Of a stretch of DNA of 64,000 bases, positions 60,863-64,000 are shown piece after piece (the stretch's first letter is position 1; each line of letters starts with the position of its first letter). The notes under the pieces are model-generated. The model worked only from the letters and a program-made list of their open reading frames with translations, was not told where the DNA came from and did no database searches. The DNA lies in assembly GCA_977020255.1 (NCBI GenBank), contig CDROCS010000253.1, positions 3,286,001 through 3,350,000 on the forward strand. Direction: 5' to 3'. Origin of the DNA: Obrimoposthia wandeli (lineage: Eukaryota). A program made the translations under genes and the position numbers.

Positions 60863-62671
60863 TCACTTAGTACAAGCTGCAATAGGATGAATCACGGCTT
60901 TGGTGATTTTTCCATATTGAAGCTTAACGAGAGGTTGGTTGATATAGCCATTAAATTTTTGTGACCTCCACTGGGGTAATAAAGCAGGATCTGTCGTTAA
61001 ATTGGCAATAAGTCCTGTGGATTTCTGTGCTTTTACCTTATTTTTACCATAAATATTGTTAGTCGCCGTCTCTGGTGGTAAACCGTTAGCAAAGCTTTTT
61101 TCACGACTCGCGGCTACAATGCAAATTCTATTTTCTGCCGCGCGAGATAATAAGCTATATTCAACCTCGCAAGGCTCTTGAATATCAAAGGGGATCAGCA
61201 ACAAGTGTATACCATTTAAAGTCGCAACCTTGACTATTTCAGCTATGTTAGCATCATCGGCTGTTAGCATAGCAAGGCTAATGTTTCCCTGTTCTAAGGG
61301 CAATTTTATAATATTTAATTCATCACCTAGTTCAGTCCATTGATATCGTTTACAAAAATGTAACTGCTGCTGTGTTGCTAATAAACCATGCTCGCTTATC
61401 AGTACCGCCTGATGTTTTCCCTCAATAATTAAACTAGTGCACAGATATTGAAAAGGTCTCAATGCAGCGCTGACTTGATCAATTAGCTGCTTGCTTAAAT
61501 ATGCTATCTGGTTTCGTTGTTCTGTATCATTAGTGATTGTTTTATCGGCGATAAAGAATAATTCAGGTAATTGAATAATGTCAGTGAGGTTATTTTCAAT
61601 GTACTGACAAACATCTTCAATCGCTTGCTCGTTAGACTTATAGGTTGCAAATATTGCCACATTAGTTGTTACTGGAACCTTATTAGCATTCACTTGTGCA
61701 AGCGGTGGTGCTTGTTTTATCGCTGCTGTTAGTACTTGATAAAGTTCAGGACGTAGCTGTTTAATAAGCTGCGTGCCATCAGGGCGGTATTTGTTGTTTA
61801 GTCCAACCCCTGTTCCTGTTTCAGCTAAGTCTATATCAGCAAAAATAAACCCTTCTTTATTGTTAGTAAGCTTTGCTAACACCTTGCCATCGGGAGAGAC
61901 TATTTGGCTTTGCCCCGTGCCAATGCTGGTACTAACAAGCTCTTCTTGTTCTTGCGTCGTATCTTGCGGTATTAATAAACCCACTTTATTTGCCGTCGCT
62001 AAAAAAACGTTATTTTCGAACGCTCGAGCAGGATCATGTAAGTGGCTTTGATCTATTGCGAATGAACTAATGGAGTTACACAGTAATTGCGCACCACTTA
62101 AGGCTAATCCTTGTGACGTCTCAAAGGTCATGCTGTCGTTACCTGCTAACAGTCCAACTTTTCCAAAGGATGTTGCTACTACCTCAGAGACTTTACTCGC
62201 GGGAATGAAAAAATAATTTTCTTGCGCGGATAAGGTTTGTTTGTCCGTTTGGTTAATAAGCTTGCCAAGAGGGGAAAATACGCACGAGGTGACACTAATG
62301 TTTGATTTAACATTTGAGGTATTACTTGAATTAATCGCGCCGTCTTGATTATTGCTCAAAACGTCGCGCAAAAGGTCACGTCGTAAAGTGACGTTGATGA
62401 CAATGTAACAGTCATGTTTTATTGCTTGCTCCGCTATAGCTTGTAAAAAAGGTCCTTCAAGGGCTAAGGCTTGATCCCATGCCTGATTATGATTGGCATA
62501 ACAAGGCTGAGTATTACTAAACGGTGTATTAGAAAAAAGAGTATTACAAAATTCAGGCAGCACGATTAACGATGGCTCGCATACTGCGGCCTCATTTATC
62601 ATACGAATGCAGCTTGCTAGATTTTCTTGAGAATTTGATGAGGTGGCAAACTGAGAAACGGCTACTCGCAT
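60863..62671 (-). CDS. Tandem two-domain carbon-nitrogen hydrolase (nitrilase fold), nucleophile Cys apparently absent
   Basis: Domain 1: LPEFCN…DKQ…GLLAGND…RAFENNVFLATAN. Domain 2: LPELF…AMLTADD…RAAENRICIV. Confidence 0.85.
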   Translation of the reverse strand: MRVAVSQFATSSNSQENLASCIRMINEAAVCEPSLIVLPEFCNTLFSNTPFSNTQPCYANHNQAWDQALALEGPFLQAIAEQAIKHDCYIVINVTLRRDLLRDVLSNNQDGAINSSNTSNVKSNISVTSCVFSPLGKLINQTDKQTLSAQENYFFIPASKVSEVVATSFGKVGLLAGNDSMTFETSQGLALSGAQLLCNSISSFAIDQSHLHDPARAFENNVFLATANKVGLLIPQDTTQEQEELVSTSIGTGQSQIVSPDGKVLAKLTNNKEGFIFADIDLAETGTGVGLNNKYRPDGTQLIKQLRPELYQVLTAAIKQAPPLAQVNANKVPVTTNVAIFATYKSNEQAIEDVCQYIENNLTDIIQLPELFFIADKTITNDTEQRNQIAYLSKQLIDQVSAALRPFQYLCTSLIIEGKHQAVLISEHGLLATQQQLHFCKRYQWTELGDELNIIKLPLEQGNISLAMLTADDANIAEIVKVATLNGIHLLLIPFDIQEPCEVEYSLLSRAAENRICIVAASREKSFANGLPPETATNNIYGKNKVKAQKSTGLIANLTTDPALLPQWRSQKFNGYINQPLVKLQYGKITKAVIHPIAACTK

Positions 62672-62977
62672 GATTTATATTTTCCAGGTAACTTATGATT
62701 GTTTGAACTTAGCAATGTGAACGCATGGCTATTATTGACGGGATTTTACCTTAAAAATCTATAGGGGAGGCTATTTTAATGGATTATTACGGTTATTTAA
62801 AACACCTCTGCATAAAAATTGTTTATAAACAATGCATTAACTAAATTTGTAGACAGGCTACAGTGTAGTTTTACTCGGTTGGTAACGGGTATACAGACTA
62901 CTCAGCTATATAATTTTTAGTAGCACAGCCTCTGGTTTACATTTCATACCCTTTTTATATTAATTAAGATAAACCTT

Positions 62978-63014
62978 GCAAAACATAATGAGAATGATTA
63001 TCATTATGTTTTGC
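62978..63014. promoter_or_regulatory. Double overlapping Fur box within a perfect 14-bp inverted repeat
   Basis: CATAATGAGAATGATTATC (62984-63002) and GAGAATGATTATCATTATG (62990-63008) each match GATAATGATAATCATTATC at 16/19. The arms are GCAAAACATAATGA and TCATTATGTTTTGC. Confidence 0.85.
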
Positions 63015-63035
63015 TGGATTTATTTAAGGATATAC

Positions 63036-63420
63036 ATGAAAAATAGACTCGTTACTTTTCTCCCTACAGATGCTTTTCACAATGGTTCAGATATAAGTTT
63101 TGCTATGGTGATGAACAAAGAACGCGTCAGCGCATATATACCCAAGCCACTTGAAGGTGCAGGTTTCAGCTGGAATTAGAAACGCTTTTAGGCAAGGCAT
63201 TGATTGAAGAGAATAGTTATTCTATTGTCGAAATCAATAACGTAGCATAAAGCGTTTCTAAACCAGCCCTATGGGGACCCCTGAGCAGTTTATGCTCTTC
63301 GTTGCCTCGTTTTTTAAGGGAATAACCCTTAATAAAATGAGGCGCCTTGATCATAAATCGCTCAGTGGTCCTGAAATACGCAGCTTCAAGTGGCTTGGGT
63401 ATATGTCACAAATGAAGTAA
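63036..63420 (+). pseudogene. Small ORF interrupted by a MITE; reconstructs to 39 aa
   Basis: AAGGA-N5-ATG 63036. Removing the MITE and one TA gives MKNRLVTFLPTDAFHNGSDISFAMVMNKERVSAYMSQMK*, with the stop at 63418-63420 abutting the next gene's RBS. Confidence 0.6.
63136..63404. mobile_element. Non-autonomous MITE-like element (269 bp including the duplicated TA/ATAT target)
   Basis: Perfect 21-bp terminal inverted repeats ATATACCCAAGCCACTTGAAG / CTTCAAGTGGCTTGGGTATAT. Internal stem-loops (for example 63180-63188 with 63249-63257). No transposase. Confidence 0.88.
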
Positions 63421-63431
63421 GGGAGAGCGGT

Positions 63432-63866
63432 ATGGAACATTCTCAATGGCAATCATTGTTGAAGCACGGTAACTATTACTTTGATAATTTTCAGCTAGAT
63501 CAAGCAGAGACTTTCTATTTAGAGGCTTATTATTTACTAAGTACAGCGCGTGGGCATGATCCACTATCGTCAGAGGTTTTAATGGCCTGGGTATGTACTT
63601 GTCATAACTTAACGTCATTGTATGAAAAATTTGGCGACTTAGAGCTGTCGCTAGAATATTTACTGATCCCGCATGAATATTTACTGAGCGTATCTGAAGC
63701 TAATTATTTAAATGACGATATTAAATTGACAGCTTTTAAAGCGATAAGCATAACGCTACCAGCCATTTTATCATTCACTAAAAATCACTCTACTTGTGAT
63801 GGATGTCAGTCACAGCTCCCGTTATTACAAAAAATGATGGTACAAGAGGCAAGCACTATTCACTAA
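63432..63866 (+). CDS. Helical TPR-like hypothetical protein (DUF2753-like); start ATG 63432 rather than 63390
   Basis: RBS GGGAG precedes ATG 63432. WQSLLKHGNYYF…AWVCTCHNL…LEYLLIPH. The ORF-track start at 63390 lies inside the MITE. Confidence 0.75.
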   Translation: MEHSQWQSLLKHGNYYFDNFQLDQAETFYLEAYYLLSTARGHDPLSSEVLMAWVCTCHNLTSLYEKFGDLELSLEYLLIPHEYLLSVSEANYLNDDIKLTAFKAISITLPAILSFTKNHSTCDGCQSQLPLLQKMMVQEASTIH

Positions 63867-64000
63867 TGAACAGTGCTTACTACATCTTCATCATACAGTT
63901 TTTTTAGTAGATAATTTCTGATTAACAAGATAAAAAACAACTAAATGTAGGTGGAGTCACAATGACATTTAAGAGGAAGCGAATAACCCAATGAACCTAT

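What the first reader, a model, noticed from the sequence alone, without database searches (positions are those of the whole stretch)
62978..63866. Fur-boxed operon whose first gene is a hidden 39-aa small protein split by a MITE
Seen: a very strong double Fur box is followed by AAGGA-N5-ATG (63036). The MITE at 63136-63404 interrupts this ORF. Excising it with one TA restores a 39-codon ORF whose TAA sits directly against the RBS of the downstream TPR-like gene, the spacing expected of a real operon. With the MITE in place the peptide gets a new tail (…VSAYIPKPLEGAGFSWN*, 47 aa) and a structured spacer is inserted before the next gene. Inference: this is an unannotated iron-starvation small protein (or leader) plus a DUF2753-like partner, probably continuing past the window edge (ATG at 63991).
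Basis: partly seen in the sequence, partly recalled or inferred. Interest (0 to 1): 0.7.

Follow-up and report, generated by a model that had tools for sequence, protein, structure and literature searches.

The report
Decayed pseudoazurin gene, not a small protein
The "hidden 39-codon gene" behind an iron-sensing switch is what remains of an ordinary 147-codon copper-protein (pseudoazurin) gene that lost its middle and was then hit by a small mobile element, so this is gene decay and not a new small protein.

Summary
The sequence observations hold. There is a strong Fur box over a promoter, AAGGA-N5-ATG at 63036, and a 263-bp TA-duplicating MITE (63139-63401). Removing the MITE gives a 39-codon ORF that ends against the ribosome-binding site of the next gene. 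The operon continues into an ArsP_2 transporter gene starting at 63991.

The interpretation does not hold. In the closest relatives, the same Fur box, ribosome-binding site and ATG open a 147-aa pseudoazurin gene. That gene ends at the same spot before the same DUF2753-like gene. This is true of a contig whose DUF2753-like protein is 85% identical, of a C. psychrerythraea isolate, and of others.

The window keeps three pieces of that gene: the first ~10 codons, ~11 codons around the first copper-ligand histidine, and the last ~23 codons. Two in-frame deletions of 47 and 61 codons removed the signal peptide and the Cys-His-Met copper loop.

The retained tail has diverged faster than the neighbouring gene. 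Two other Colwellia genomes carry differently collapsed relics, which needs at least two independent losses. A Fur-boxed pseudoazurin paralog survives about 39 kb away.

Independent contigs from a 2018 study contain the relic and its MITE junction, so it is not an assembly artefact. The two downstream genes are intact. The case is ordinary, with modest side interest in a modular Fur-controlled iron-sparing cluster.

The parts
62976..63004 (+). Sigma-70-type promoter-like site, TTGCAA-17-TATCAT
   Evidence: Its position and sequence are conserved in front of the pseudoazurin gene of the closest relative, L076.
62984..63008 (.). Fur box: two overlapping 19-mers forming a hexamer array CATAAT GAGAAT GATTAT CATTAT
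   Evidence: 2-3 mismatches to the consensus, 0.05 hits expected by chance. The core AATGATTATCATT is kept in L076, L033, L034, L064 and L066. Fur-like boxes sit at the equivalent place in most other relatives.
63026..63038 (+). Ribosome-binding site AAGGA and ATG, inherited from the pseudoazurin gene
   Evidence: Relatives have TAAGGATA..(3)..ATG at the start of their 147-aa gene.
63036..63067 (+). Relic piece 1: the first ~10 codons of pseudoazurin (start of the signal peptide; MKNRLVTFLPT against MKSILVTLIIT)
   Evidence: The blastn block covering window 62896-63067 matches L076 1300-1469 at 78% identity, E=3e-37.
63051..63084 (+). Relic piece 2: ~11 codons of the strand that carries the first copper-ligand His (VTFLPTDAFHN against VTFVPSDPSHN). 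It overlaps piece 1 in a microhomology, GT(T/A)ACTTT.
   Evidence: E=8e-4 against L033 and E=1e-4 against L034; 74% identity over 34 nt against L076 1594-1627.
63082..63138 (+). Relic piece 3a: C-terminal helix codons (GSDISFAMVMNKERVSAY) up to the MITE target TA
   Evidence: a 94-nt block, 77% identity, E=2e-17, matching L076 1808-1900.
63139..63401 (.). 263-bp non-autonomous element (MITE) with TACCCAAGCCACTTGA... terminal inverted repeats. The TA target duplication lies at 63137-8 and 63402-3.
   Evidence: As RNA it folds at -141 kcal/mol, z = -12.
63404..63420 (+). Relic piece 3b: the last codons (M)SQMK plus TAA, the native stop of the pseudoazurin gene
63421..63866 (+). Ribosome-binding site GGGAGAG and an intact 144-aa DUF2753-like helical-repeat protein (ATG 63432)
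   Evidence: DUF2753 at 17.3 bits, below the cut-off; 35 homologues; invariant residues present; hhalign to a true DUF2753 at 72% probability, E=3e-5; six helices, weak TPR matches.
63991..64000 (+). Start of the 398-aa ArsP_2 10-TM transporter gene. It runs on to G000:C253:3351188 (L031:992-2188).
   Evidence: PF11449, 443.6 bits, full length; the orthologue is named 'putative manganese transporter' by NCBI.

Best explanation
The locus is a Fur-repressed operon whose ancestral order was pseudoazurin, then a DUF2753-like protein, then an ArsP_2 transporter.

In this Colwellia-like bacterium the first gene has decayed. Two in-frame internal deletions of 47 and 61 codons, each with its junction in a few bases of microhomology, removed the signal peptide, most of the beta-sandwich and the Cys-His-Met copper-binding loop. 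What remained was a 39-codon shell that still used the original promoter, Fur box, ribosome-binding site, ATG and stop. A genus-wide TA-targeting MITE later inserted 5 codons before that stop. This gave the shell a 47-aa read-out and placed about 250 nt of highly structured, untranslated RNA in front of the DUF2753-like gene.

The promoter end and the stop/ribosome-binding-site end survive because the two intact downstream genes still depend on them. The peptide itself is most likely functionless. Loss was probably tolerated because a second, Fur-boxed pseudoazurin gene lies about 39 kb away.

Shown: homology of the pieces, the deletions, the MITE, intact downstream genes, conservation of the Fur box.

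Inferred: Fur and iron control, read-through of the MITE, redundancy as the reason for loss.
For: - Relatives with the same neighbours carry a 147-aa Copper-bind gene where the window has the 39 codons. These are L076 (DUF2753-like protein 85% identical), L033, L032, L077, L037 and L040.
- The upstream intergenic DNA and the divergent CN-hydrolase gene are syntenic with L076.
- Three blastn blocks map the window onto L076 nt 1-32, 157-190 and 371-444 of that gene. The missing lengths are 141 and 183 nt.
- The intact orthologue is a pseudoazurin: PF00127 at 56 bits, TIGR02375 at 108.9 bits (cut-off 109.85), and PDB pseudoazurin 1bqk at E=4e-23.
- The Cys, second His and Met copper ligands (CTPHFALGM) fall in the second deletion.
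- Constraint is relaxed. In the 23 tail codons, window against L076 shows 9 non-synonymous and 3 synonymous codon differences and 74% nt identity. L076 against L033 is 96% identical there, and the adjacent DUF2753-like gene is 89% identical between window and L076.
- G310 and G312 carry other collapsed relics with a different junction. The tree places all three relics among intact alleles, and its well-supported branches force at least 2 losses.
- A paralogue with a Fur box exists at C253:3388835.
- Contigs of runs X3 (0 differences) and X4 (97.5% identical), from a 2018 study, span the deletion junctions and the left MITE junction.
- In V. parahaemolyticus, a DUF2753 protein and a 'putative manganese transporter' are listed in the Fur regulon (PMC12341060).
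Against: - There are no expression data. The only runs available were contigs, so Fur or iron control and read-through of the MITE are inferred from sequence alone.
- Both deletions are in frame and the ORF kept its native start and stop. This is what selection for a translated ORF would produce. Counting G312 (in frame) and G310 (out of frame), 3 of 4 events are in frame, which has a chance probability of about 0.11.
- No MITE-free allele of this same lineage was found, so the order of deletions and insertion is inferred.
- The middle block is short (34 nt), and part of it also aligns with the signal-peptide region.
Confidence: 0.88

Rival explanations
1. The relic, though derived from pseudoazurin, is kept as a translated spacer ORF. 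Ribosomes travelling from the native ATG to the native stop would protect the transcript from Rho-dependent polarity, or deliver ribosomes to the DUF2753-like gene by coupling. On this view only in-frame deletions survived.
For: Both window deletions are multiples of three (141 and 183 nt), and the G312 relic is also in frame. In all intact alleles the stop lies 8-11 nt before the next ATG.
Against: The G310 relic is out of frame and stops 36 nt early. In the window itself, the MITE moved the stop to 253 nt before the next ATG, yet the allele persists in a strain 97.5% identical to the window. Three of four events in frame has a chance probability of about 0.11. The DUF2753-like gene has its own ribosome-binding site, GGGAGAG.
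Confidence: 0.08
2. One reading: a genuine, previously unannotated iron-starvation small protein or regulatory leader peptide that the MITE has split.
For: It has a good ribosome-binding site and ATG directly behind a strong Fur box, and its stop abuts the next ribosome-binding site.
Against: Those signals are the pseudoazurin gene's own. No relative has a conserved short ORF at this position: they have the full gene, a different relic, or nothing. The retained codons evolve faster than the neighbouring gene. There is no Pfam match and no Rfam leader or sRNA match.
Confidence: 0.03
3. Assembly artefact: the deletions or the MITE arose from mis-assembly of a bacterial contig inside a large eukaryote assembly.
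For: The window lies in a 1.35-Gb, 6912-contig assembly, and repeats such as MITEs can confuse assemblers.
Against: Independent contigs cover 62700-63187 (X1, 0 differences), 62904-63090 and 63061-63160 (X3, 0 and 1 differences) and 62707-63187 (X4, 12 differences). These span both deletion junctions and the left MITE junction.
Confidence: 0.01

Closest known systems
Pseudoazurin (TIGR02375; PDB 1bqk, Achromobacter cycloclastes), a periplasmic type-1 copper electron carrier
   Same: The intact orthologues at this position match it (E=1e-31 and E=4e-23). They have a signal peptide, His/Cys/His/Met ligands and a C-terminal helical extension. The window's ORF retains the first-His strand and the C-terminal helix codons.
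   Different: The window copy lacks 108 of 147 codons, including the signal peptide and three of the four copper ligands, and it is interrupted by a MITE. It cannot be a cupredoxin. The classical pseudoazurins serve nitrite reductase, whereas here the gene sits in a Fur-boxed cluster.
Fur-regulon members 'DUF2753 domain-containing protein' and 'putative manganese transporter' of Vibrio parahaemolyticus (PMC12341060)
   Same: The same two kinds of protein appear under a Fur box. NCBI names the Cognaticolwellia orthologue of the ArsP_2 gene 'putative manganese transporter'.
   Different: In Vibrio they lie at separate loci. The window's 144-aa protein is only a distant relative of DUF2753 (17.3 bits against a cut-off of 28.7; hhalign 72%). 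Orthology with the Vibrio genes was not tested.
Iron-sparing replacement of iron enzymes, for example Ni-SOD induction under iron limitation in Alteromonas macleodii (PMC7190382)
   Same: In relatives the same Fur-boxed cluster also carries sodN, sodX and a small HxGHDH membrane protein. The window's genome keeps such a module, with its own Fur box and a DUF2753-like paralogue, at another locus.
   Different: The window's operon has no sodN. Function here is inferred from context only.
TA-duplicating bacterial MITEs, the target habit of IS630/Tc1-mariner-type elements (family assignment rests on my own knowledge)
   Same: It has terminal inverted repeats and a TA duplication, is 263 bp with no sizeable ORF, has dozens to hundreds of copies per genome, and forms a strong hairpin as RNA.
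   Different: No autonomous partner or transposase was identified here. I found no published description of this Colwellia family in the library searched.

Membership tests
Bona fide small-protein gene (conserved sORF) | The short ORF is conserved as such in relatives that lack the MITE | tested here: not met
   Relatives have a 147-aa gene, other relics (37 and 47 aa with a different junction), or no ORF at this position.
Bona fide small-protein gene (conserved sORF) | Purifying selection on the peptide | tested here: not met
   Over the 23 tail codons there are 9 non-synonymous and 3 synonymous codon differences against L076, at 74% nt identity. The neighbouring gene is 89% identical. The sample is small.
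Pseudoazurin / cupredoxin (PF00127, TIGR02375) | Four type-1 copper ligands: His, Cys, His, Met | tested here: not met
   Only the first His (FHNG) remains. The C-x2-H-x4-M loop lies in the 61-codon deletion. The intact orthologues meet this feature.
Pseudoazurin / cupredoxin (PF00127, TIGR02375) | Full-length match to the family model and a signal peptide | tested here: not met
   The 47-aa product has no Pfam hit. Orthologue L033 scores 56 bits on PF00127 and 108.9 bits on TIGR02375, against a cut-off of 109.85.
Fur-regulated promoter | Match to the 19-bp Fur consensus, overlapping the promoter | tested here: met
   2-3 mismatches, 0.05 expected by chance, overlapping the -10 element.
Fur-regulated promoter | Conservation of the box at orthologous promoters | tested here: met
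   The core is kept in L076, L033, L034, L064 and L066. Boxes lie directly before the DUF2753-like gene where pseudoazurin is absent.
Fur-regulated promoter | Fur binding and iron-dependent transcription | not testable with these tools
   The runs were available only as contigs.
MITE | Terminal inverted repeats, target-site duplication, many copies, non-coding | tested here: met
   The longest internal ORF is 49 aa.
MITE | A cognate autonomous element with matching ends | not tested
   No search for a transposase-bearing copy was made.
DUF2753 (PF10952) | Score over the Pfam gathering threshold | tested here: inconclusive
   The window protein scores 17.3 bits against 28.7 in the local Pfam copy. 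Homologues carry precomputed PF10952.16 hits. hhalign to a true DUF2753 from contig C3840 gives 72% probability, E=3e-5, with a shared CHNL motif.
ArsP_2 (PF11449) | Full-length match over the threshold | tested here: met
   443.6 bits, covering 1-359 of 359 model positions.

The most novel reading that the evidence does not exclude
The repeated collapse of the first gene with the reading frame preserved (window 47 + 61 codons, G312 100 codons) might not be chance. It could reflect a need for ribosome transit from the Fur promoter to the DUF2753-like gene.

More broadly, the DUF2753-like protein (conserved CxCH...CxxC...H) and the ArsP_2 permease could form an undescribed Fur-controlled metal-supply module. 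Such a module would serve the non-iron replacement enzymes: pseudoazurin with Cu, NiSOD with Ni, MnSOD with Mn. DUF2753 relatives sit beside sodN here and beside sodA in another bacterium of the same assembly.
Probability: 0.15. Interest if true: 0.55.

Novelty: new member of a known kind. Interest (0 to 1): 0.25.

Why it matters
It removes a false candidate from the list of new small proteins. It also shows a general trap: a well-placed ribosome-binding site, ATG and stop behind a strong regulator box can be the two ends of a collapsed ordinary gene.

On the positive side, the comparison outlines a modular, Fur-boxed iron-sparing cluster in Colwellia and its relatives. The modules are pseudoazurin, a DUF2753-like protein, a small HxGHDH membrane protein, NiSOD with its peptidase, and an ArsP_2 permease. 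Two of these components have unknown function and would be worth testing. The cluster's first gene has been lost at least twice.

Tried and rejected
- The Rfam scan of 62600-64000 found nothing near a gathering score, so there is no RyhB-like sRNA or known leader.
- An exact-protein look-up of the window's DUF2753-like protein found no other assembly, so no same-strain MITE-free allele could be fetched.
- The first MAFFT alignment of the region was misleading because of the deletions. It was replaced by block-wise blastn.
- Foldseek against the PDB gave only weak generic TPR, 14-3-3 and designed-repeat matches for the DUF2753-like model (best E=0.047), so no functional lead came from it.
- Read laying showed a MITE-free joint in run X4 (63137 to 63431 with 28 other letters). 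Its tail (YLSQVK) and spacer differ from the window, so it belongs to a more distant relative and is not the empty site of this lineage. With only 27 nt on one side, it cannot show whether that allele is full-length.
- Literature searches for Fur-regulated pseudoazurin, or for this MITE in Colwellia, found nothing specific.
- SodT, the nickel permease beside cyanobacterial sodN, belongs to the UreH family and not to ArsP_2. The analogy is by position only.
- A first frame error and two slicing or strand errors in scripts were corrected.

Full report
**What is in the sequence.** The window is G000:C253:3286001-3350000. C253 is a 4.68-Mb bacterial contig of Colwellia type that sits inside a 1.35-Gb, 6912-contig assembly.

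Between the divergently transcribed 602-aa carbon-nitrogen hydrolase gene (60863-62671, minus strand) and the region of interest lies a promoter-like TTGCAA-17-TATCAT at 62976-63004. A Fur box overlaps it. The 19-mer consensus matches at 62984-63002, and at 62990-63008 on both strands, with 2-3 mismatches. These are the only hits in the 64-kb window, against 0.05 expected by chance.

AAGGA at 63026-63030 is followed after 5 nt by ATG at 63036. The ORF from that ATG runs to TAG at 63177-63179 and encodes 47 aa.

**The MITE.** A 263-bp element occupies 63139-63401.
- It has 34-nt terminal inverted repeats.
- It folds as RNA at -141 kcal/mol, z = -12.
- It has at least 40 copies in the same genome.
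- Every full-length copy examined ends in TACCCAAG...CTTGGGTA and has TA just outside, with one copy degenerate on one side. The target duplication is therefore TA.
- The family is present in 50 of 55 genomes of the genus, with up to about 200 candidate copies per genome.

Removing the element and one TA joins ...GCGCATATA to TGTCAC.... This gives a 39-codon ORF ending SAYMSQMK-TAA at 63418-63420, 11 nt before the next ATG at 63432.

**What the 39 codons are.** I fetched loci that encode relatives of the downstream transporter and of the 144-aa protein.

In the closest relative the gene directly before the 144-aa gene is a 147-aa Copper-bind protein ending ...MNKERVSTYLTQVK. This relative is L076, a Logan contig whose 144-aa protein is 85% identical to the window's. 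The same arrangement holds in L033 (a Colwellia psychrerythraea isolate), L032, L077, L037 (Thalassotalea marina), L040 and others.

The intact protein is a pseudoazurin-type cupredoxin. It scores 56 bits on PF00127 and 108.9 bits on TIGR02375, just under the 109.85 cut-off. It matches PDB pseudoazurin 1bqk at E=4e-23.

The window is syntenic with L076 from the hydrolase gene through the intergenic region, Fur box, ribosome-binding site and ATG (78-83% identity). Block-wise blastn then maps the window onto three parts of the L076 gene:
- Window 62896-63067 matches through gene nt 1-32. In protein terms, MKNRLVTFLPT aligns with MKSILVTLIIT.
- Window 63051-63084 matches gene nt 157-190. VTFLPTDAFHN aligns with VTFVPSDPSHN.
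- Window 63082-63138 plus 63404-63440 matches gene nt 371 through the stop, the ribosome-binding site and the next ATG (E=2e-17).

The missing stretches are 141 and 183 nt, that is 47 and 61 codons, totalling 324 nt. Both junctions lie in short microhomologies: GT(T/A)ACTTT for the first and AATG/TTGG for the second.

The signal peptide is gone, and so is most of the beta-sandwich. The C-x2-H-x4-M copper loop is also gone, and only the first ligand His survives. The "hidden small protein" is therefore the two ends and one internal scrap of a pseudoazurin gene.

**Is the relic under constraint?** In the 23 retained tail codons, the window differs from L076 at 12 codons. Nine of these differences are non-synonymous, and nt identity is 74%. 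Over the same codons L076 and L033 are 96% identical, and the adjacent 144-aa gene is 89% identical between the window and L076. The sample is small, but it points to relaxed constraint.

Two further genomes of the genus carry other wrecks of the same gene. G312 (L066) has a 47-codon in-frame relic that joins LLTTD to the MNKE...tail. G310 (L064) has a 37-codon out-of-frame relic. On a tree of the 144-aa proteins, the three relic-bearing loci are interleaved with intact ones. The window pairs with L076 (intact), and L066 pairs with L078 (intact, 99/96 support). Well-supported branches force at least two independent losses.

In each case the promoter, Fur box and ATG at one end survive, and the stop and ribosome-binding site of the next gene at the other end survive. 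This is what would be expected if only the downstream genes are still under selection.

Three of the four deletion events are in frame. By chance this happens about 11% of the time, so I do not read it as evidence for a translated function. It does keep the coupling or anti-polarity rival alive at low probability. The MITE itself argues against that rival, because it moved the stop to 253 nt upstream of the next ATG.

**Is it real DNA?** Contigs from public runs cover 62700-63187 (X1, identical), 62904-63090 and 63061-63160 (X3, 0 and 1 differences) and 62707-63187 (X4, 12 differences). They cross both deletion junctions and the left MITE junction. X3 and X4 come from a different, 2018 study.

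The relic-plus-MITE allele therefore exists in at least one other sample set and in a strain 97.5% identical to the window. X4 also holds a MITE-free joint, but its sequence belongs to a more distant relative, so it is uninformative about this lineage.

**The rest of the operon.** The 144-aa protein (63432-63866) is intact and carries all family-invariant residues, including a CxCHNL motif, a CxxC pair and a C-terminal His. The AlphaFold model (pLDDT 88.5) has six helices and only weak generic TPR-like matches.

It falls below the DUF2753 threshold in the local Pfam copy (17.3 bits against 28.7). Its homologues, however, carry precomputed PF10952 hits. A profile of the family aligns to a bona fide DUF2753 protein from another bacterial contig of the same assembly at 72% probability, E=3e-5.

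ATG 63991 opens a full-length ArsP_2 transporter (443.6 bits). NCBI calls its Cognaticolwellia orthologue "putative manganese transporter". No Fur box lies between the two genes, so co-transcription from the Fur promoter is the simplest reading. This is an inference.

**Context that gives the likely function.** In relatives the cluster is modular. The modules are pseudoazurin, the DUF2753-like gene, a 60-70-aa membrane protein with an HxGHDH motif, sodN (NiSOD, PF09055), a small S24/S26-like peptidase in the position of sodX, and ArsP_2. Many presence/absence variants exist. A Fur box sits before whichever gene comes first.

The window's genome keeps a separate operon elsewhere: Fur box, DUF2753-like paralogue, HxGHDH protein, sodN and sodX at C253:~1408600. 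It also keeps a Fur-boxed pseudoazurin paralogue at C253:3388835, with 48% identity and 105.9 bits on TIGR02375. That paralogue is a plausible reason the operon copy became dispensable.

Published data fit an iron-sparing role. NiSOD is induced by iron limitation in Alteromonas macleodii (PMC7190382). In Vibrio parahaemolyticus, a DUF2753 protein and a "putative manganese transporter" are listed among Fur-regulon genes (PMC12341060). Whether ArsP_2 supplies Ni, Cu or Mn is unknown. The cyanobacterial sodN-linked permease SodT belongs to a different family, UreH.

**Verdict.** The interpretation as a new small protein or leader is not supported.

The best explanation is a Fur-controlled operon whose first gene, pseudoazurin, was reduced by two in-frame deletions to a 39-codon shell and then interrupted by a common MITE, while the two downstream genes remain intact (confidence about 0.88). 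Fur and iron control and read-through of the MITE remain sequence-based inferences.

This is ordinary gene decay. The modest side interest lies in the recurrent loss of the first gene and in the uncharacterised DUF2753-like/ArsP_2 pair that travels with non-iron replacement enzymes.

Noticed in passing
G000:C253:~1408600-1410100 (L074:753-2276): A second Fur-boxed operon in the same genome. It has a Fur box (3 mismatches) 18 nt before a 142-aa DUF2753-like paralogue, then a 60-aa HxGHDH membrane protein, sodN (NiSOD) and a 98-aa sodX-like peptidase.
   Followed up: partly
G000:C253:3388835-3389230 (L071:1483-1932, minus strand): An intact pseudoazurin paralogue (48% identical to the orthologue of the decayed gene; TIGR02375 at 105.9 bits). 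It has its own Fur-like box 27-51 nt upstream and lies next to what look like fragments of a TonB-dependent receptor.
   Followed up: partly
G000:C3840:143723-144887 (L079:1721-2887, minus strand): Another bacterium in the same assembly has a bona fide DUF2753 gene (242 bits) directly downstream of a sodA-type SOD gene. DUF2753 relatives thus sit beside non-iron SODs in two lineages (sodA here, sodN in Colwellia).
   Followed up: partly
L064 (G310) and L066 (G312), upstream of their DUF2753-like genes: Two other Colwellia genomes carry collapsed pseudoazurin relics (37 aa out of frame; 47 aa in frame). Their junction (LLTTD | MNKE...) differs from the window's. The Fur box core is retained in both.
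   Followed up: yes
L034-L036, L040, L041 (relatives): The cluster is a mosaic. sodN/sodX and the HxGHDH membrane protein are present or absent between the DUF2753-like gene and ArsP_2. L041 has the peptidase-like gene but no sodN in that interval. L039 has pseudoazurin directly before ArsP_2 with no DUF2753-like gene.
   Followed up: partly
L002 (G000:C253:3048488), L007/L012 (G000:C253:2549967-2551056): The same MITE occurs in head-to-tail or closely spaced pairs. The family is in 50 of 55 genomes of the genus, with up to about 200 candidate copies each.
   Followed up: partly
window 60863-62671 (minus strand): A 602-aa protein has a carbon-nitrogen hydrolase domain in its first ~290 residues and a second half that Pfam leaves unassigned. 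It is transcribed divergently from the Fur promoter.
   Followed up: no
whole assembly G000: The window belongs to a complete-looking 4.68-Mb Colwellia-type contig embedded in a 1.35-Gb, 6912-contig assembly. That assembly also holds contigs of other bacteria (for example C3840, C2814 and C6241, the latter two with further sodN genes). The bacterium is therefore an associate or contaminant of a eukaryote sample.
   Followed up: no
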